Under the pieces are notes generated by a model. The model had not been told where the DNA came from. It searched no databases and was given only the letters and a program-made list of their open reading frames with translations. This document shows, piece by piece, positions 22,922-51,468 of a stretch of 64,000 nucleotides of DNA (position 1 is its first letter; the number at the start of each line of letters is the position of its first letter). Location of the stretch: the IMG/VR virus record IMGVR_UViG_3300034072_000758, positions 310,001 through 374,000 of that record. One strand, 5' to 3'. The translations under genes were made by a program, and so were the position numbers.

Positions 22922-22962
22922 GCTATTGACATTGGGTATAGAGGTAGCTTATAAATACATCA

Positions 22963-23292
22963 TCACTGTTTGACGACTGTGTAATAGGCTTGGTAAGACG
23001 GGAGTTCGACTCTCCCCGCCTCCACCATTGAATACATTAGTTGCTAGGTAGCCCCTAGTACGGAATATAGGATTGATCATCCTTAGCAGGTTCGAATCCT
23101 GCCCGAATGTGTTCTATTATGGGGGCGTTTTGGTTTCGATTATCGGCTGACGGACAGGAATAGGTGACGGTAAGAAACGACCGACCAATCAGTTCAAATT
23201 CATACTTGCCAACGACAACGTTGACATGAAGGACATGGCGCTCGCCGCCTAATCCATTCGGGGCTTGAGAGAGCCTAGCAACAGAATCTCTC
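22963..23292 (+). ncRNA. ssrA: Circularly permuted two-piece tmRNA (alphaproteobacterial type), tag ANDNVDMKDMALAA
   Basis: Acceptor piece ends GACGGGAGTTCGACTCTCCCCGCCTCCACCA (23027); coding piece starts GGGGGCG (23121) with G3.U70; tag 23208-23252; GGGC..GAGAGA-GCCT-AGCAACAGAA-TCTCTC pseudoknot; TTGACA and TATAAATA promoter at 22926-22957. Confidence 0.93.
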
Positions 23293-23293
23293 G

Positions 23294-23399
23294 TTCTATC
23301 TACAGAGTCCGGCCCCACAAGGGAAAGGCGTACAGACGGTTATATTGTTAGATACAGAACTTCACTTCGGTGCCTTCTGTGTGGCCATGTAACCTAGAA
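23294..23399 (+). ncRNA. Candidate structured RNA co-transcribed after tmRNA
   Basis: Nested stems TTCTA/TAGAA, TACA/TGTA, GGCC/GGCC enclosing ACAGAA/TTCTGT with a C(UUCG)G loop; no ORF; lies upstream of the terminator. Confidence 0.45.
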
Positions 23400-23415
23400 A
23401 TCTGTTTGATCAATT

Positions 23416-23439
23416 AGGCTCGCTTCGGCGGGCCTTTTT
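23416..23439 (+). terminator. Intrinsic terminator
   Basis: AGGCTCGC-TTCG-GCGGGCCT-TTTT. Confidence 0.85.
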
Positions 23440-23506
23440 GCGTTTGACTTGACATTTGAGTATTTCGTGATACGATATACTTAGGTCAATATCGGAGGTA
23501 TAAAAT

Positions 23507-34827: not shown

Positions 34828-35201
34828 TGTGAATTATATTCTTTCGGGAATCGACCGCAGAGTATTGCCGCAACGAAATGATCAGCAACCTCTTGTTCAG
34901 TCACGTCACTATATACTTCAACACATGAGGTGGCGAGCAATTCCCCGGTATCATCGCGCGTATCTACGCAATAATCGTATGAAAAAATATCACCTATCAC
35001 GTTATGCTCAGGATCATAGTCCAAGATTGTGTAGGCTTGAGACGTATAATTGAAATCCTCATTGCGATTTTTCAACAGCAAGGGATCATGCTTATAGATG
35101 CGGAAATACAAATTCATATTCAAATGTGCGTATTCGTATACCGACTTACGAATGTTTTCCGGTAACTCAACACTTTGGAAGAATTTGATAATGATGTCCA
35201 T
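34824..35201 (-). CDS. Hypothetical protein
   Basis: Coupled ORF. Confidence 0.6.
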   Translation of the reverse strand: MDIIIKFFQSVELPENIRKSVYEYAHLNMNLYFRIYKHDPLLLKNRNEDFNYTSQAYTILDYDPEHNVIGDIFSYDYCVDTRDDTGELLATSCVEVYSDVTEQEVADHFVAAILCGRFPKEYNSQ

Positions 35202-35473
35202 CAGGAGATCGTAGAACGATTGTGAACGATGTAATTGTACACCGCCGTTGGCGTGATTGAAGGACCGCTCAGATAGTCAAGATCGTCTTCGGGGCCGGGT
35301 TCTTTGTAGTCGAACACATCGCTACACTTGTTGACGTTTGTTCGCTTACCGTTGGGAGACAGGATGCTCACCACGGTCTTCCCGACCTTCCAGAACCAAA
35401 TCTCGGAGCCGATCTGAATCTCGCGCTCACCCTTACCTTTGACGTGAGGCTTTTTGGGTTTCTTGCGTTCCAT
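35201..35473 (-). CDS. Hypothetical protein
   Basis: Coupled ORF. Confidence 0.65.
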   Translation of the reverse strand: MERKKPKKPHVKGKGEREIQIGSEIWFWKVGKTVVSILSPNGKRTNVNKCSDVFDYKEPGPEDDLDYLSGPSITPTAVYNYIVHNRSTIS

Positions 35474-35578: not shown

Positions 35579-35579
35579 G

Positions 35580-35652
35580 TGCCGGTTGCAGGAATCGAAC
35601 CCGCGACATCTTGTTTACAAAACAAGTGCTCTACCAACTGAGCTAAACCGGC
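35580..35652 (-). tRNA. tRNA-Thr(TGT), no encoded CCA
   Basis: Full cloverleaf; anticodon arm CTTGT-TTTGTAA-ACAAG. Confidence 0.93.
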
Positions 35653-38629: not shown

Positions 38630-38703
38630 TGGAGCGGGTAGCGAGAATCGAACTCGCACGATCAGCATGGCAAGCTGACAGGCTACCACTACATCATACC
38701 CGC
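38630..38703 (-). tRNA. tRNA-Gly(GCC) with CCA
   Basis: GCGGGTA...TCAGC-TTGCCAT-GCTGA...TACCCGC-T-CCA. Confidence 0.93.
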
Positions 38704-38705
38704 GT

Positions 38706-38799
38706 AGCGGGGAATGCTTCTGTTGCCAAGTGCATCCCCAAAACTCCGGTTAGCGACAATTAAGCCGCCAGAGCCAAGACTACGTTATCGTTGTCAGTT
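38706..38799 (-). ncRNA. tmRNA-like fragment lacking the tRNA-like domain (tag frame DNDNVVLALAA* plus pseudoknot)
   Basis: Tag 38795-38760; GAGT..GGGGATGC-ACTT-GGCAACAGAA-GCATTCCC pseudoknot with the same architecture as in the main tmRNA; TAAATA at 38810-38805. Confidence 0.7.
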
Positions 38800-38842
38800 G
38801 ATTATATTTATCATAGACAAATATCAAACGCAACTAAAAAGT

Positions 38843-39214
38843 CTAATTTCTTTGACCACCATCAAGAATCAGATGAAAGAAAAAATCCTCCAACTCTTCT
38901 TCGGATTTCCAATTACGAATCTTATAACTAACGATGTCCCAATTATCCCAATCTTCGCTGGTTCGGTACAGCTTACCGTAACTTTGCCATTCTCCGCCCT
39001 TATGAGGCCCATAGGTGATGCTGATCACAAAGAACTCGTGGACAGTAAAAGTAAACCGGGTAAGACTGTGAATGTGCTCGTATATAGGTTTCTTGGAAGT
39101 CTTATGGTATCGGGCCATAATACGATATTCTTTATCGTCTACTGACAATAGATACCCATTTGGATACACATTCGTTTCCAATAGAATACCAGCAATGGCC
39201 TTGGTAATAATCAT
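38843..39214 (-). CDS. Hypothetical protein
   Basis: Coupled ORF. Confidence 0.6.
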   Translation of the reverse strand: MIITKAIAGILLETNVYPNGYLLSVDDKEYRIMARYHKTSKKPIYEHIHSLTRFTFTVHEFFVISITYGPHKGGEWQSYGKLYRTSEDWDNWDIVSYKIRNWKSEEELEDFFFHLILDGGQRN

Positions 39215-39633
39215 ACCAACATTCTAGCAGTAACTAGAAAATCGTCAAGACCTTCATAGCTCTTGGTAGTTGTGATCATACAAATTCTTCTAACGAGTTC
39301 ACGATGATCCGTAAGAATAATGTATAGGGCGTCTTTTCCGAGGTTCGCCCACTCCATGTGTAAATGGATTGAGAATTTGAATTTACCCGGAGAACTAATA
39401 TCCAATCGCCCGGTATATTTGTGATTATATGGTTTGATGTAATTCATCACCAAATCACCATTTGGCGTCTTTAAGACCCGGCGTCTGGAATCACGATCTC
39501 GAATTACATTACCGTATGGAGAGACGGGTAGTAAATCATTGTACAATTTGATCATGGCGCGGGCCAAATCAATATCACCGGGGTTCAACTCGAATAACTC
39601 ATCACCATCTTTATCCAGTTGATTGATACTCAT
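39211..39633 (-). CDS. Hypothetical protein
   Basis: GAGGGG SD right after tRNA-Ser. Confidence 0.6.
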   Translation of the reverse strand: MSINQLDKDGDELFELNPGDIDLARAMIKLYNDLLPVSPYGNVIRDRDSRRRVLKTPNGDLVMNYIKPYNHKYTGRLDISSPGKFKFSIHLHMEWANLGKDALYIILTDHRELVRRICMITTTKSYEGLDDFLVTARMLV

Positions 39634-39645
39634 AGTAAACCCCTC

Positions 39646-39735
39646 TGGCGGAAGCGGTGGGATTCGAACCCACGGAGGACTTTCACCCTCGCAGCTTTAG
39701 CAAAGCTGTGCTATCGACCACTCAGCCACGCTTCC
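39646..39735 (-). tRNA. tRNA-Ser(GCT) with CCA
   Basis: CAGCT-TTGCTAA-AGCTG, long variable arm, G73. Confidence 0.93.
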
Positions 39736-39737
39736 AT

Positions 39738-39926
39738 TTAAAAGTCGTTATTCAACGACTTCTGTTCTGTTGTCTCATACTTGTAGTTCTTTTTCAACCA
39801 GTCCCGACATATTTTCATATGCCAGTCCCGTTGATTATACGCCTTATCACTACTCAGTTCCACATAATCACTTGCGATATATTGGATAAGCTGTTCGGCA
39901 GTCAATTGATCTGTGTACTCACTCAT
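39738..39926 (-). CDS. Small hypothetical protein in the tRNA operon
   Basis: ORF between tRNAs. Confidence 0.55.
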   Translation of the reverse strand: MSEYTDQLTAEQLIQYIASDYVELSSDKAYNQRDWHMKICRDWLKKNYKYETTEQKSLNNDF

Positions 39927-39938
39927 GGACGTATCGTA

Positions 39939-40160
39939 TCATGTTAAGTCAGATTTTTCAATTTTTAATATAAGCAGTATTTTTTCATCATCGGTTAAGC
40001 TCTCAGCCATACTAATTTCCTCATATACTGCTGGACAACCGATACGAAGGGACGTTACTTCATCAAGCATAAGTTCGAACGTAAGTGTACCTCGCTCAAT
40101 TCCACTTACGTAGACTTGAATTAACATACACCAAGCTTTGAATATTTGCTCATTAGTCAT
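39939..40160 (-). CDS. Small hypothetical protein in the tRNA operon
   Basis: MTNEQIF...; ATG overlaps the CCA end of tRNA-Cys. Confidence 0.5.
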   Translation of the reverse strand: MTNEQIFKAWCMLIQVYVSGIERGTLTFELMLDEVTSLRIGCPAVYEEISMAESLTDDEKILLILKIEKSDLT

Positions 40161-40234
40161 GGAGTTCCCGATAGGATTCGAACCTACATAAGACGGGGTT
40201 GCAATCCGCCGCATAGCCTTTCTGCCACAGGAAC
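40160..40234 (-). tRNA. tRNA-Cys(GCA) with CCA
   Basis: GCGGA-TTGCAAC-CCCGT, U73. Confidence 0.9.
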
Positions 40235-40253
40235 ATAACCGGATTATACCGGG

Positions 40254-40342
40254 CGGACAATGGGGGATTCGAACCCCCGGAGGACATTACTGCCCTCACT
40301 CGCTTTCCAAGCGAGCGCGATAGACCGCTCTGCCAACTGTCC
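40254..40342 (-). tRNA. tRNA-Ser(GGA)
   Basis: CTCGC-TTGGAAA-GCGAG, long variable arm, G73 followed by CCC. Confidence 0.92.
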
Positions 40343-40600
40343 TTACTTTTGCCATATATGAGACTGTTCATCAACCTTTACCGGAAAGGTATGAACAGTC
40401 GTGCGAAAAAGAAAGTCCGATCCCATCTGACCAACAAGTCGATCAGTAAATGCTTCTGGGGTATAGTGATCGTTTACCCCAGCTAGGATCGCCGTCTTCA
40501 ATATGGCTTCGCATTCGTTGCTATCATCAAACTTATCCATATCGACAAACCATAAACGGCTATTCCGATCATTATAAGTTTCAACAACAGCATATATCAT
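40343..40600 (-). CDS. Hypothetical protein in the tRNA operon
   Basis: Coupled to the Nudix gene. Confidence 0.6.
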   Translation of the reverse strand: MIYAVVETYNDRNSRLWFVDMDKFDDSNECEAILKTAILAGVNDHYTPEAFTDRLVGQMGSDFLFRTTVHTFPVKVDEQSHIWQK

Positions 40601-41097
40601 TTTTGCCTTTCGAACCAGCTTTTAACCACATCGGTATGAGACCCGAAGCAAAGTTCTTCCGGTTCCAAAATGGCTCGGATTGCTGGCACTTCATTGGTTG
40701 GAACGAAGTCTTTCAAAACTTGTGCCATCGGAATAGGCGTCTTAGCTTCGCAAAAGGCCATCATATTACGACCGTTGTTGTATGAACTTATCAGACGAAC
40801 ATCAACCGGGTCAATAACCAGTCCAGTTTCTTCCACAAGCTCACGTACCGCAGCATGTTCGATAGAAGCGTCAGAAAGCTCTTGGAAGCCACCTACGAGC
40901 GCCCAGCCGTCCTTACAAGGTTGAATGCCTCGTTGGGCTACCAGAAGGCCCACAGAGCCTAATGGGAACGATACCGGTAAGAGAAGTACAGCAACCCCGA
41001 TTGGGTTGATGAATGTGATGTTGCCGCAGCTTGAACAAGCCTTGGGGTACTCAGTCGCGGTATGCTCGGTGCCGCAGAATTTACAGAACTTGTCCAT
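40597..41097 (-). CDS. Zinc-ribbon Nudix hydrolase
   Basis: FCKFCG..CSSCG..F.NP; WALVGGF...AAVRELVEETG. Confidence 0.88.
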   Translation of the reverse strand: MDKFCKFCGTEHTATEYPKACSSCGNITFINPIGVAVLLLPVSFPLGSVGLLVAQRGIQPCKDGWALVGGFQELSDASIEHAAVRELVEETGLVIDPVDVRLISSYNNGRNMMAFCEAKTPIPMAQVLKDFVPTNEVPAIRAILEPEELCFGSHTDVVKSWFERQK

Positions 41098-41122
41098 TTA
41101 TATCGCCAGAATTTTTACGGAG

Positions 41123-41207
41123 CGGAAGCGGTGGGATTCGAACCCACGGAACCTTACGGTTCGGAAGTTTTCAAGACTTCTGGGATAAACCTCTCCCCCA
41201 CGCTTCC
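41123..41207 (-). tRNA. tRNA-Ser(TGA), no CCA
   Basis: GAAGT-CTTGAAA-ACTTC, long variable arm, G73. Confidence 0.92.
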
Positions 41208-41214
41208 TTAAATA

Positions 41215-41421
41215 TTAGAAATGTCGTCTTCTGACTTTTCTTACTATAGAATCAACCGCTTTTTCCTCAGTCGGTTGGCCATTCACTATTATAACTACGG
41301 TGTCAGCCTGTCCACCTAAGTCAGTGACCGCCTCTTCCGCTTCGTATAATGCTTCTTTTGATGTTTCGGCGTTAATTTTAGATTTCGAACGAAAGACGTA
41401 TTCTACTTCAAATTCAGCCAT
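41215..41421 (-). CDS. Small hypothetical protein in the tRNA operon
   Basis: MAEFEVEYVF... after GAAGG. Confidence 0.55.
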   Translation of the reverse strand: MAEFEVEYVFRSKSKINAETSKEALYEAEEAVTDLGGQADTVVIIVNGQPTEEKAVDSIVRKVRRRHF

Positions 41422-41496
41422 AACACGTAGACCTTCAACACGATTATTACTCTTTTTACGTCTAACACGATGGTAAAGACTGGTCAATTTATTTTG

Positions 41497-41586
41497 TGGC
41501 GGATGGTGAGGGATTTGAACCCCCGGTTCCTTTCGGAACGCCAGTTTTCGAAACTGGTGCAATCAGCCGGACTCTGCCAACCATCC
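41497..41586 (-). tRNA. tRNA-Ser(CGA) with CCA
   Basis: CCAGT-TTCGAAA-ACTGG, long variable arm, G73. Confidence 0.93.
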
Positions 41587-41587
41587 G

Positions 41588-41662
41588 TGGACTATGATGG
41601 AATCGAACCATCGCTATCGTTGAGTTACAACGACGACCTATCCTTTACAGGTCTGATAGCCC
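41588..41662 (-). tRNA. Atypical tRNA-like RNA: Ala-type acceptor (G3.U70, A73) with nominal AAC anticodon
   Basis: GGGCTAT/ATAGTCC-A; 5-bp D stem GACCT/AGGTC; TCGTT-GTAACTC-AACGA; canonical T arm. Confidence 0.7.
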
Positions 41663-41673
41663 TTAATTTTAAT

Positions 41674-41762
41674 TGGGGGACGGGTGGGATTCGAACCCAC
41701 GGAACCTTCTACAAGACCCTCCCGCGTCAATCGGGACACCTTAAGCCACTCAGTCACCGTCC
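41674..41762 (-). tRNA. Atypical tRNA-Ser(TGA)-like gene (6-bp acceptor, C discriminator, CCA)
   Basis: GGACGG/CCGTCC-C-CCA; TCCCG-ATTGACG-CGGGA; long variable arm. Confidence 0.65.
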
Positions 41763-41767
41763 ATCAA

Positions 41768-41980
41768 TTAAACCGTCTGTTCTTCGATCAAAGACATATG
41801 CTTCCTGATCCAACGCATAAAGAACAATCCTTTATCCTTGGTCAAGAAGCGGGCAGTCCCGCAATCGGAGATCGGAACCGGAAACTCAAACCCATCTTCG
41901 CAGCGATAGATCAAGTTGCCGTCCTGATAGTGAACGAAGTTTACTTCGCCTTTTACTCTTGTTTTAATGTCAGCCATCAC
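41768..41980 (-). CDS. Small hypothetical protein in the tRNA operon
   Basis: ..GNLIYRCEDGFEFPVPISDCGTARFL..DK..FFMRWIRK; AAGGG SD. Confidence 0.7.
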   Translation of the reverse strand: MMADIKTRVKGEVNFVHYQDGNLIYRCEDGFEFPVPISDCGTARFLTKDKGLFFMRWIRKHMSLIEEQTV

Positions 41981-42000
41981 TTTACCCTTTCATTCAGTGA

Positions 42001-42084
42001 TGGTGTGTCGTGATGGATTCGAACCACCGTGCCTTTCGGATGGGGGTTACAACCCCACGCAATCAACCGCTCTGCCAACGACAC
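42001..42084 (-). tRNA. tRNA-Tyr(GTA), copy 2, with CCA
   Basis: TGGGG-TTGTAAC-CCCCA, long variable arm, A73. Confidence 0.9.
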
Positions 42085-42096
42085 ATAAAGGATTAA

Positions 42097-42220
42097 TCGA
42101 CCCCTCGCCTTCGGGCTTTTACCGCTGGTCATTAGGCTACCGGAGAGGAGTTTCCGTAGCCTCAGCTTACTATGTGCTCACCCCGTTTGGAGGCATACCC
42201 CTACTAGGTTAAAGTAAGCA
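42097..42220 (-). ncRNA. Candidate structured RNA between the two tRNA-Tyr genes
   Basis: Stems GCTTACT/AGTAAGC, AGGCTAC-GGA/TCC-GTAGCCT, GACC/GGTC; no ORF. Confidence 0.45.
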
Positions 42221-42227
42221 CTTCATT

Positions 42228-42312
42228 TGGTGTATGGTGCTGGATTCGAACCAGCGCGCCTTTCGGAACAGATTTACAGTCTGTCGGTATCGACCAACTC
42301 ACCCAACCATAC
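42228..42312 (-). tRNA. tRNA-Tyr(GTA), copy 1, with CCA
   Basis: ACAGA-CTGTAAA-TCTGT, long variable arm, A73. Confidence 0.92.
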
Positions 42313-42313
42313 G

Positions 42314-42385
42314 TACTCGGTAATGGAATCGAACCATTATCTTCGGAGCCACAATCCGACGCTCTTACCGTTGAGCTAACCAAGC
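42314..42385 (-). tRNA. tRNA-His(GTG), alphaproteobacterial type without G-1 (G1.U72, A73)
   Basis: U at -1; GCTTGGT/ACCGAGT-A; TCGGA-TTGTGGC-TCCGA. Confidence 0.9.
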
Positions 42386-42404
42386 ATAGTTATAAGATTC
42401 ACAA

Positions 42405-42416
42405 TGTAAAAGAACA
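42405..42416 (-). promoter_or_regulatory. boxA-like antitermination element
   Basis: TGTTCTTTTACA versus rrn boxA TGCTCTTTAACA, preceded by a hairpin (42415-42466). Confidence 0.5.
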
Positions 42417-42467
42417 TGTCTCATACACGATACAAGAAGAGGCTTCTTGCTTCATTAATGAGACATT

Positions 42468-42544
42468 TGGGGTGACCAACGGGATTCGAACCCGCGCTTG
42501 GAGATTCACAGTCTCTCGTGCTAACCGCTAACACTATGGCCACC
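42468..42544 (-). tRNA. tRNA-His(GTG), canonical G-1:C73 type with CCA
   Basis: G-GTGGCCA/TGGTCAC-C-CCA; anticodon loop CTGTGAA. Confidence 0.92.
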
Positions 42545-51255: not shown

Positions 51256-51468
51256 TTATTTGATGCTGGTCCAGTTACACCATGCGTCATCATCGGACAA
51301 ATGATCGAAAGCCATAAGCTTATCTATATAGTTCTGAGCCTCGATATAGGTCTTGAACCGCATGATCTCATAATTACACATGATCATATCGGCCCAGAAG
51401 AACCAGAACATGTGTTGCTGAACGTAAAACATCGATTTACGACGCTTGATGCGATATTTGATTTCCAT
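51256..51468 (-). CDS. Hypothetical protein
   Basis: GAGGA SD. Confidence 0.6.
   Translation of the reverse strand: MEIKYRIKRRKSMFYVQQHMFWFFWADMIMCNYEIMRFKTYIEAQNYIDKLMAFDHLSDDDAWCNWTSIK

What the first reader, a model, noticed from the sequence alone, without database searches (positions are those of the whole stretch)
22963..23292. Phage-encoded permuted tmRNA whose intervening segment holds a tRNA-like module
Seen: the 93-nt intervening segment (23028-23120) is closed by GAAUACAUU/AAUGUGUUC. It contains a hairpin CUAGG/CCUAG, an anticodon-like arm AGGAU-UGAUC-AUCCU and a perfect T arm GCAGG-UUCGAAU-CCUGC. Established: two-piece tmRNA is typical of alphaproteobacteria, and the excised loop is short in Caulobacter. 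Inference: the host is alphaproteobacterial, and the excised piece may be a stable tRNA mimic or a processing aid.
Basis: partly seen in the sequence, partly recalled or inferred. Interest (0 to 1): 0.6.

Follow-up and report, generated by a model that had tools for sequence, protein, structure and literature searches.

The report
Phage two-piece tmRNA with tRNA-like spacer
A 517-kb phage carries a working-looking split ("two-piece") tmRNA gene, and the stretch that must be cut out between the two pieces folds like a small tRNA; the same design turns up in dozens of other phage tmRNA genes but almost never in bacteria, so it probably acts as a built-in cutting signal.

Summary
Window 22963-23295 is a circularly permuted, alpha-type tmRNA gene (Rfam RF04321 97.5 bits, RF01849 72.3 bits). 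It lies in a 516,805-bp phage genome with terminal repeats that also encodes SmpB. It is tRNA-like but not a tRNA: ARAGORN is silent and Rfam gives only a sub-threshold tRNA-Sec match. The module is not conserved. The four nearest megaphage tmRNAs have unrelated spacers, and no close kin turned up in the viral or metagenome collections. The design, however, recurs. I found about 50 viral permuted tmRNA genes of alpha, beta and cyano type, in about 23 sequence clusters. Each has a T arm abutting a closing stem that starts 0-2 nt after CCA. A few hold real tRNAs there instead. Across 185,579 cellular genomes only two such genes appeared. In one family the stems show compensatory changes. My best reading (0.45) is a tRNA-derived cassette kept as a processing "punctuation" signal, cut by RNase P-type enzymes next to the CCA. 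This is inferred, not shown. The claim of an alphaproteobacterial host cannot be decided. No expression data could be obtained.

The parts
22926..22931 (+). -35-like hexamer TTGACA of the tmRNA promoter
   Evidence: Read. It falls in the promoter part of the RF01849 alignment. The consensus scan did not list it because the -10 ends in A.
22950..22955 (+). -10-like hexamer TATAAA, 18 nt after the -35
   Evidence: Read. Inference only. The Rfam match begins 8 nt downstream at 22963.
22963..23027 (+). Acceptor piece of the two-piece tmRNA: 5' strand of the long helix, tmRNA T arm (23000-23016), acceptor 3' strand CGCCUCC (23017-23023), ACCA (23024-23027)
   Evidence: RF04321 alignment, model positions 1-64. 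G3-U70 is formed with the coding piece's 5' end (sequence).
23028..23120 (+). Intervening segment (93 nt) that must be removed; stem-closed, cloverleaf-like, tRNA-like cassette
   Evidence: It is an insert relative to both Rfam models. Fold z = -3.1. Sub-threshold tRNA-Sec hit at 20.6 bits. No tRNA call by ARAGORN.
23030..23038 (+). Closing stem, 5' strand (pairs with 23106-23114); starts 2 nt after CCA
   Evidence: The same kind of stem closes 57 of the 66 unique phage spacers of at least 25 nt in an unbiased sample of 71.
23042..23060 (+). Hairpin 1 (7 bp, 5-nt loop), in the place of a D arm
23069..23083 (+). Hairpin 2 (5 bp, 5-nt loop UGAUC), in the place of an anticodon arm but with the wrong loop size
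23086..23102 (+). Canonical T arm (5 bp, loop UUCGAAU), 3 nt from the closing stem
23106..23114 (+). Closing stem, 3' strand, followed by the 6-nt tail UAUUAU that serves as the leader of the RNase P site at 23120/23121
23121..23415 (+). Coding piece: 5' acceptor strand GGGGGCG (23121-23127), helices to the acceptor piece, tag frame, downstream structured region. The 3' end is not mapped.
   Evidence: RF04321 and RF01849 alignments. The extent to the terminator is inferred.
23208..23252 (+). Tag reading frame: resume codon GCC, peptide ANDNVDMKDMALAA, stop TAA
   Evidence: Aligned to the tag region of both Rfam models and read. Relatives carry ANDNV...AA tags.
23416..23445 (+). Intrinsic-terminator-like hairpin (8 bp, 6 G-C) plus T run

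Best explanation
This is a complete transcription unit for a phage-encoded, alpha-type two-piece tmRNA, with its own promoter-like site and terminator. The phage supplies its own SmpB elsewhere in the genome. The precursor folds so that the acceptor stem of the tmRNA's tRNA-like domain and the closing stem of the 93-nt intervening segment face each other across a small internal loop: ACCA-UU on one strand and UAUUAU on the other. RNase P cuts before G23121, which is established for tmRNA in general. The intervening segment is a tRNA-derived, tRNA-shaped cassette with an acceptor-like closing stem, a canonical T arm next to that stem's 3' strand, and two further hairpins. It has lost tRNA identity but kept all of its helices. 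I propose that it serves as 'punctuation'. It offers the tRNA end-processing machinery, most likely RNase P, a second tRNA-like substrate whose 5' edge lies 0-2 nt after the CCA. The acceptor piece would then be released with a mature or nearly mature CCA-3'OH, and the cassette would be discarded. The closing stem itself is the general phage feature that brings the two ends together. What is shown: gene identity, fold, recurrence of the design, restriction to phages, and covariation in another family. What is inferred: which enzyme cuts and where, tRNA ancestry, and any benefit.
For: Gene identity: RF04321 97.5 bits and RF01849 72.3 bits. G3-U70, ACCA and the ...ALAA tag are read. The phage encodes SmpB at 172 bits. 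Four of 5 related megaphages have permuted tmRNAs. Fold: 29 base pairs with no mismatch, z = -3.1. That is not what a decaying pseudogene looks like, although its tRNA identity features are gone. Recurrence: a pattern scan of IMG/VR found 78 loci, of which about 50 are permuted tmRNA genes (ARAGORN; Rfam confirmed 31 of 32 tested, of alpha, beta and cyano types). They fall into about 23 clusters whose interiors cannot be aligned with one another. Geometry in 44 unique spacers: the closing stem starts a median 0 nt after CCA (range 0-2), is a median 11 bp long, and the T arm lies a median 0.5 nt from its 3' strand, followed by a 4-5 nt tail ending in AU. Real tRNAs sit in the same slot. tRNA-Asn lies 1 nt after CCA in cyanophage contigs L098, L118, L155 and L156. 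tRNA-Ile abuts CCA in L132. tRNA-Arg sits inside a closing stem in L109. There, RNase P cleavage at the tRNA 5' end necessarily makes the tmRNA 3' end; this rests on established knowledge of RNase P in polycistronic tRNA transcripts. Selection: in family F3 the closing stem and the outer T-stem pairs show compensatory changes, with 11 of 19 pairs changed on both sides. Phage restriction: the same pattern over 185,579 cellular species gave only 2 tmRNA genes, one of them matching a viral type. Thirty parsed alphaproteobacterial spacers are short (median about 30 nt) and lack T arms.
Against: The T arm is dispensable for processing in general. Only 1 of 71 unique phage alpha-type spacers in an unbiased sample has a strict T-loop motif, yet nearly all have the closing stem. 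Cyanophage S-SSM7 has the same tmRNA as L155 without the tRNA. This window's module has no conserved relative: the nearest megaphages have unrelated spacer interiors, and no kin appeared in the metagenome scan. So selection on this particular module is untested. The stacked closing stem plus T stem is 14-16 bp (14 here, with a 3-nt gap), against 12 bp in tRNA, so RNase P's usual measuring would not place the cut at the stem base. In family F1 the T-loop word is invariant but its stem has only 2 bp, and an alternative hairpin is predicted.
Confidence: 0.45

Rival explanations
1. Passenger relic. A phage tRNA gene landed in the one part of a permuted tmRNA gene that is transcribed and discarded. 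It lost tRNA function and is drifting. Only the closing stem matters, and the tRNA-like look has no function.
For: Intact tRNAs occur in this slot in other phages, and one close pair of cyanophage genes differs only by presence or absence of the tRNA. About 98% of sampled phage spacers lack a T arm. The module is absent from the nearest relatives. This genome has 57 tRNA genes to draw from, and the spacer shares its T-arm sequence and some D-region letters with several of them.
Against: All 29 predicted pairs are intact although the D loop, anticodon loop and variable region no longer fit a tRNA. Drift should break helices too. In family F3 a non-tRNA cassette keeps its T stem through compensatory changes. 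The T arm is consistently placed against the closing stem in about 23 unrelated clusters.
Confidence: 0.28
2. Folding clamp cut by double-strand or single-strand endonucleases. The spacer is a compact, stem-closed knot that holds the two tmRNA pieces in register while they fold. RNase III or RNase E cuts the long quasi-continuous helix, and the T loop is just one of several interchangeable structural modules.
For: Closing stems of about 11 bp starting 0-1 nt after CCA are near-universal in phage spacers whatever the interior. Some bacterial spacers have them too. Interiors range from 30 to 266 nt with unrelated structured folds. ACCA and the conserved UGAU tail are partly complementary, which gives about 22 bp of near-continuous helix (read from the sequences; inference).
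Against: It does not explain why a canonical T-loop sequence, rather than any hairpin, recurs next to the closing stem, or why real tRNAs occupy the slot. The phage encodes no RNase III domain, though the host may.
Confidence: 0.15
3. Stable tRNA mimic with a job of its own. The excised cassette accumulates and acts as a decoy or regulator, for example against tRNA-targeting host defences or tRNA-binding enzymes.
For: The fold is compact and mismatch-free with a canonical T arm. The design is restricted to phages.
Against: There is no sequence conservation of any loop among the roughly 23 clusters beyond the T loop. There is no anticodon-like 7-nt loop here. No RNA abundance data exist.
Confidence: 0.1
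4. Chance resemblance: a random hairpin that happens to carry a T-loop-like word.
For: About one GGTTCRANNCC word is expected by chance per 64 kb. In the unbiased sample the motif is no more frequent than chance.
Against: The probability of the word falling in this 93 nt is below 1e-3, and lower still with a perfect 5-bp stem in the tRNA-typical position next to the closing stem. Some 50 further tmRNA spacers show the same arrangement.
Confidence: 0.02

Closest known systems
Alphaproteobacterial two-piece (circularly permuted) tmRNA, Rfam RF01849/RF04321 (Keiler, Shapiro & Williams 2000; Nawrocki, Petrov & Williams 2025, PMC11915505)
   Same: Gene order with the acceptor piece before the coding piece, a tRNA-like domain with G3-U70 and encoded CCA, an ANDN...ALAA tag, and an AU-ending leader before G1. 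It scores above both curated cut-offs.
   Different: The spacer is 93 nt and tRNA-like, against a median of about 30 nt without a T arm in 30 cellular genes. It is encoded by a phage together with a phage SmpB.
Phage-encoded two-piece tmRNAs (Melnitz and pelagimyophages, PMC9004378; huge phages, PMC7162821)
   Same: A phage origin of an alpha-type ssrA, often alongside many tRNA genes and SmpB.
   Different: In the text I could search, those papers do not describe the intervening segment. Here, and in about 50 IMG/VR loci, that segment is tRNA-like or a real tRNA.
Permuted tmRNA with an intact tRNA-Ala gene in its intervening sequence (GCA-2688965__sp002688965.2), reported as a 'unique feature' in PMC11915505
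   Same: A tRNA-shaped element sits between CCA and G1 of a permuted tmRNA gene.
   Different: That case is a high-scoring real tRNA in a nominally archaeal MAG. This one is a non-tRNA mimic in a phage, and the phenomenon is not unique: searches show many phage cases, including real tRNA-Asn, tRNA-Ile and tRNA-Arg.
tRNA-like 3'-end processing signals and tRNA punctuation: MALAT1/mascRNA, plant mitochondrial t-elements, mitochondrial tRNA punctuation, and RNase P separation of polycistronic bacterial tRNAs (from my own knowledge, not checked here)
   Same: It works like them in the proposed model: a tRNA-shaped element directly downstream of an RNA defines that RNA's 3' end through RNase P cleavage.
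   Different: No cleavage data exist here. The acceptor-like stem is 9-14 bp rather than 7. It is bacterial or phage, and the released upstream RNA must end exactly in CCA to be charged.
tRNA / tRNA-Sec (RF00005, RF01852)
   Same: A canonical T arm, four helices around a junction, and a long acceptor-like stem and long first arm reminiscent of tRNA-Sec.
   Different: It fails the models (20.6 bits against a cut-off of 47; no RF00005 hit) and ARAGORN. It has a 5-nt 'anticodon' loop, 10 nt between arms 1 and 2, no 3' CCA, and a 3-nt gap between the T arm and the stem.

Membership tests
Permuted (two-piece) tmRNA, alpha type | Covariance-model score above the curated cut-off | tested here: met
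   RF04321 97.5 bits (cut-off 47) and RF01849 72.3 bits (cut-off 50), both full length.
Permuted (two-piece) tmRNA, alpha type | Permuted order: the 3' tRNA-like half with T arm and ACCA lies upstream of the 5' acceptor strand and the tag frame | tested here: met
   ACCA at 23024-27, the G run at 23121, and the tag at 23208-23252.
Permuted (two-piece) tmRNA, alpha type | Alanine identity pair G3-U70 in a 7-bp acceptor stem, with discriminator A | tested here: met
   GGGGGCG (23121-27) pairs with CGCCUCC (23017-23), and G23123 pairs with U23021.
Permuted (two-piece) tmRNA, alpha type | Tag frame starting at an Ala resume codon and ending in a hydrophobic ...LAA degron plus a stop | tested here: met
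   GCC...TAA encodes ANDNVDMKDMALAA. Relatives carry ANDNV...AA tags.
Permuted (two-piece) tmRNA, alpha type | An SmpB partner is available | tested here: met
   The phage genome encodes SmpB: PF01668, 172 bits, at G000:C1:22414-22839.
Permuted (two-piece) tmRNA, alpha type | The precursor is actually cut into two pieces, and the RNA tags proteins | not testable with these tools
tRNA (RF00005) / tRNA-Sec (RF01852) | Covariance-model score above the cut-off, or a detector call | tested here: not met
   There is no RF00005 match at E <= 10. tRNA-Sec scores 20.6 bits against a cut-off of 47. ARAGORN makes no call.
tRNA (RF00005) / tRNA-Sec (RF01852) | A 7-nt anticodon loop with U33, a D loop with GG, and a 7-bp acceptor stem contiguous with the T stem | tested here: not met
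   The loop is the 5-nt UGAUC, the first hairpin loop is UAGCC, the stem has 9 bp, and a 3-nt gap separates it from the T stem.
tRNA (RF00005) / tRNA-Sec (RF01852) | A canonical T arm (5 bp, loop UUCRANY) | tested here: met
   GCAGG-UUCGAAU-CCUGC at 23086-23102.
tRNA-like processing signal (mascRNA / t-element type) | A tRNA-shaped fold immediately 3' of the RNA whose end it defines | tested here: met
   The closing stem starts 2 nt after CCA here and a median 0 nt after CCA in 44 unique phage spacers.
tRNA-like processing signal (mascRNA / t-element type) | Cleavage by RNase P at the 5' edge of the tRNA-like fold | not testable with these tools
   It needs in vitro or in vivo cleavage mapping. 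The geometry (14-16 bp stack against 12) is not the canonical one.
tRNA-like processing signal (mascRNA / t-element type) | The structure is conserved under selection | tested here: inconclusive
   No relatives of this module were found. Covariation is seen in another family of the same design, but it is weak or ambiguous in family F1.

The most novel reading that the evidence does not exclude
Phages have repeatedly evolved a class of split tmRNA genes in which a tRNA, or a tRNA mimic with an extended acceptor stem, sits in the excised spacer. This happened in alpha-, beta- and cyano-type genes. That element would be what makes the chargeable CCA end, through a single enzyme (RNase P) cutting two back-to-back tRNA-like domains. 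This would be a bacterial and phage counterpart of MALAT1/mascRNA 3'-end formation. The released mimics may additionally persist as small RNAs during infection.
Probability: 0.3. Interest if true: 0.7.

Novelty: new variant of a known kind. Interest (0 to 1): 0.55.

Why it matters
How the two pieces of a permuted tmRNA are cut apart, and in particular how the exact CCA 3' end is made, has never been worked out. The most recent census of about 12,000 permuted tmRNA genes lists a single tRNA inside the spacer as a unique oddity (PMC11915505). Here the tRNA-like spacer is one instance of a recurrent, nearly phage-only design, with both real tRNAs and mimics in the same slot. This gives a concrete, testable hypothesis: RNase P-made 3' ends. 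It also offers natural with/without pairs to test it on, such as cyanophage S-SSM7 against its uncultured kin. There is a practical point as well: such genes are missed or mis-annotated. ARAGORN misses this one, and the S-SSM7 tmRNA lies under a 'hypothetical protein'.

Tried and rejected
1. blastn of the locus against 50,697 GenBank phage records found no match.

2. I searched 16 partial contigs of capsid relatives for RF04321 and found none; they are fragments, so this is uninformative.

3. A metagenome scan for close kin of this spacer (same closing-stem start plus T loop) returned only tRNA Ala-Glu arrays and chance hits. A covariation test on this module itself was therefore impossible.

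5. Host inference from the phage SmpB failed. The best alpha match is 137 bits at 49% identity (highest identity seen 51%), and the best gamma match is 134 bits at 50%. There is no signal. These class samples, and that, each included one unpublished genome (G066, G185).

6. Deriving the spacer from one of the phage's 57 tRNAs gave only T-arm and partial D-region similarity, which is not decisive.

7. BLAST of three T-type tmRNA families against cultured phages gave no full-length match, so no cultured T-type mimic was identified.

8. Two script errors were corrected. A regex for the acceptor 3' end was too strict (redone). An identity clustering with gaps that were too cheap merged everything (redone with a shuffled baseline).

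10. Two older papers (PMC16621, PMC516066) are not held. Statements about Caulobacter processing rest on my own knowledge and on PMC11915505.

Full report
**What is there.** The window is bases 310,001-374,000 of a 516,805-bp IMG/VR virus record with direct terminal repeats, rated complete. A T4-type major capsid gene (Pfam Gp23, 310 bits) and a tail sheath gene flank the locus. The genome carries 57 tRNA genes.

Rfam places a permuted tmRNA at 22963-23252 (RF04321, 97.5 bits, cut-off 47). It places the alphaproteobacterial type at 22922-23295 (RF01849, 72.3 bits, cut-off 50). The sequence shows the defining parts:
- a tmRNA T arm at 23000-23016;
- the acceptor 3' strand CGCCUCC followed by ACCA, ending at 23027;
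- the 5' acceptor strand GGGGGCG from 23121, which gives a G3-U70 pair;
- a tag frame at 23208-23252 encoding ANDNVDMKDMALAA.

A TTGACA/TATAAA promoter-like pair lies just upstream, read. An intrinsic-terminator-like hairpin lies at 23416-23435. The phage also encodes SmpB (172 bits) and a CCA-adding/poly(A) polymerase family protein. It encodes no RNase III domain. ARAGORN does not call this tmRNA.

**The intervening segment.** There is a 9-bp closing stem, a 7-bp hairpin, a 5-bp hairpin with a 5-nt loop, and a perfect T arm with loop UUCGAAU. The fold adds a 3-bp helix. The energy is -27.5 kcal/mol with z = -3.1.

In a fold of the precursor's first 198 nt, the acceptor stem of the tmRNA and this closing stem face each other across an internal loop. 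The T-loop word is very unlikely to lie here by chance.

The cassette is tRNA-like but not a tRNA. There is no RF00005 match. tRNA-Sec scores only 20.6 bits against a cut-off of 47, and ARAGORN makes no call. The loop and spacing rules of tRNA are also violated.

**Is it conserved?** It is not conserved in the nearest relatives. Of five huge phages with 72-80% identical capsid proteins, four have permuted tmRNAs with ANDN-type tags. Their spacers differ:
- two have about 190-nt multi-hairpin spacers, with compensatory changes between the two copies;
- one has a spacer of about 89 nt with a similar closing stem but no T arm;
- one has a spacer of about 5-9 nt.

Searches of GenBank phages, of IMG/VR and of metagenome contigs found no close relative of this spacer. 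Selection on this particular module therefore cannot be tested.

**The design recurs, almost only in phages.** I scanned IMG/VR for a tmRNA 3' end, then a T-loop word, then a tmRNA 5' end. This returned 78 loci. ARAGORN calls about 47 of them permuted tmRNAs. Rfam confirmed 31 of the 32 I tested, spanning alpha, beta and cyano types.

In 44 unique spacers:
- the closing stem starts a median 0 nt after CCA (range 0-2) and is a median 11 bp long;
- the T stem has a median of 5 bp (4-5 bp in 35 of the 44) and lies a median 0.5 nt from the closing stem's 3' strand;
- a 4-5 nt tail ending in AU precedes G1.

Their interiors fall into about 23 clusters that cannot be aligned with one another. The window's spacer is a singleton.

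Several loci hold real tRNAs in the slot:
- tRNA-Asn lies 1 nt after CCA in four cyanophage-type contigs;
- tRNA-Ile abuts CCA in L132;
- tRNA-Arg sits inside a closing stem in L109.

The cultured cyanophage S-SSM7 has the same tmRNA as those contigs minus the 74-nt tRNA.

The same pattern over one genome for each of 185,579 cellular species gave 31 hits. Only two are tmRNA genes. One is a Lysobacterales MAG contig that matches a viral type, and the other is a Parcubacteria MAG. In a class-wide sample, 116 of 121 Alphaproteobacteria have the gene. The 30 spacers I parsed from it and two further alphaproteobacterial genomes have a median of about 30 nt (range 5-125) and no T arm.

**How common is it among phage genes?** It is rare. 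An unbiased IMG/VR sample of alpha-type genes gave 71 unique spacers with a median of 78 nt. Of the 66 that are at least 25 nt long, 57 have a closing stem of 8 bp or more, starting 0-1 nt after CCA. Sixty of the 71 end in UGAU. Only one has a strict T-loop word. The closing stem is therefore the general phage feature, and the tRNA-like interior is an uncommon addition.

**Evidence for selection elsewhere.** In one family of nine sequences (alignment A2), the closing stem, the first hairpin and the outer T-stem pairs change on both sides while staying paired. This holds for 11 of 19 pairs. In another family of ten (A3), the closing stem covaries strongly. The T-loop word there is invariant, but its stem has only 2 bp and an alternative hairpin is predicted. 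The class is therefore heterogeneous.

**Mechanism.** It is established that RNase P makes the 5' end of tmRNA and that tRNA-processing enzymes cleave the permuted precursor (PMC11915505, PMC3985003). Where a real tRNA directly follows the CCA, RNase P cleavage at that tRNA's 5' end must create the tmRNA 3' end. The mimics occupy the same position with the same tight spacing.

My best reading is therefore that they act as punctuation. A second tRNA-like domain sits back-to-back with the tmRNA's own, and this lets the same machinery free the CCA end. I put this at 0.45.

Several things count against it. The T arm is dispensable in most phage genes. The stack is 14-16 bp rather than the canonical 12 bp. 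No relatives of this module exist, and there are no RNA data.

The main rival, at 0.28, is a tRNA gene captured in a tolerant, co-transcribed slot and now drifting. The mismatch-free helices here and the covariation in A2 argue against pure drift. A third reading is a clamp cut by RNase III or RNase E. The partial complementarity of ACCA with the UGAU tail gives a near-continuous helix of about 22 bp, which fits that idea. A fourth reading is an independent tRNA-mimic function. Both remain open.

**Host.** The gene is alpha-type. However, an alpha-type two-piece tmRNA occurs in a cultured phage of OM43 (PMC9004378). The phage SmpB is equally distant from alpha and gamma homologues. The host cannot be named.

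**Novelty.** Phage-encoded two-piece tmRNAs and tmRNA-plus-SmpB pairs in huge phages are known (PMC9004378, PMC7162821). In the searchable literature I found no description of tRNA-like spacers. The 2025 tmRNA census calls one tRNA-in-spacer case unique. I therefore rate this a new variant of a known kind.

**Limits.** Both pattern scans require an exact T-loop word and fixed distances, so all counts are lower bounds. The class samples each included one unpublished genome (G066, G185), and no statement rests on them.

Noticed in passing
G000:C1:22414-22839 and 34857-35216 (outside the window): The phage encodes its own SmpB (PF01668, 172 bits) and a PolyA_pol/CCA-adding family protein (106.6 bits). 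No RNase III domain was found.
   Followed up: partly
G000:C1:117291-117364 (outside the window): One of the 57 phage tRNAs has anticodon CUA (ARAGORN labels it 'Pyl'), which is an amber-suppressor type. I did not examine whether the phage recodes TAG. ORFs in the window read normally under table 11.
   Followed up: no
L313 (GU071098.1 21006-21263, Synechococcus phage S-SSM7): A cyano-type permuted tmRNA is unannotated in this cultured cyanophage and is overlapped by 'hypothetical protein' SSSM7_025. Its uncultured relatives L098, L118, L155 and L156 differ by a whole tRNA-Asn in the spacer.
   Followed up: yes
L357 (GU071106.1 22316-22626, Synechococcus phage Syn19): Syn19 has a Leu-Thr-Ala-Asn tRNA array where L155 has Asp-Tyr-Thr, then the tmRNA acceptor piece, then Asn, then the coding piece. 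The acceptor piece sits where tRNA-Ala sits. This hints that recombination between tRNA-Ala and the tmRNA's alanine-type end placed the tRNA in the spacer.
   Followed up: partly
L094:2633-3098: A GOLLD RNA (RF02032, 202 bits) lies 1.5 kb from a T-type permuted tmRNA, inside a dense tRNA array on a 23.8-kb viral contig.
   Followed up: no
L082:1560-1770 and L083:1560-1778: The closest capsid relatives carry spacers of about 190 nt with several hairpins and 9 compensatory pairs between the two copies. This is a different structured RNA in the same slot, and no Rfam family matches it.
   Followed up: partly
L250, L252, L256 (spacers of 200-266 nt): Some phage tmRNA spacers are long enough to hold small ORFs or other elements between the usual closing-stem halves. 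I did not examine them.
   Followed up: no
window 38630-42543 (- strand): There is a dense tRNA array of 12 genes with duplicates: Ser x5, Tyr x2, His x2, plus Gly, Cys and Val. A separate tRNA-Thr lies at 35579-35652.
   Followed up: no
window 23055-23318 (- strand): A mechanical 87-aa GTG ORF lies antisense to the tmRNA. It is most likely spurious and could be mis-annotated as a protein gene, as happened in S-SSM7.
   Followed up: no
window 51349-51359 (- strand): This is the only other T-loop word outside a called tRNA. Rfam finds nothing credible around it, so it is probably chance.
   Followed up: yes
L347, L331, L334 (alphaproteobacterial genomes G027, G032, G092): A few cellular spacers have the phage-style closing stem (AAGCACAC.../...GUGUGUUU followed by CUGAU). 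This suggests which bacterial lineages the phage genes came from.
   Followed up: no
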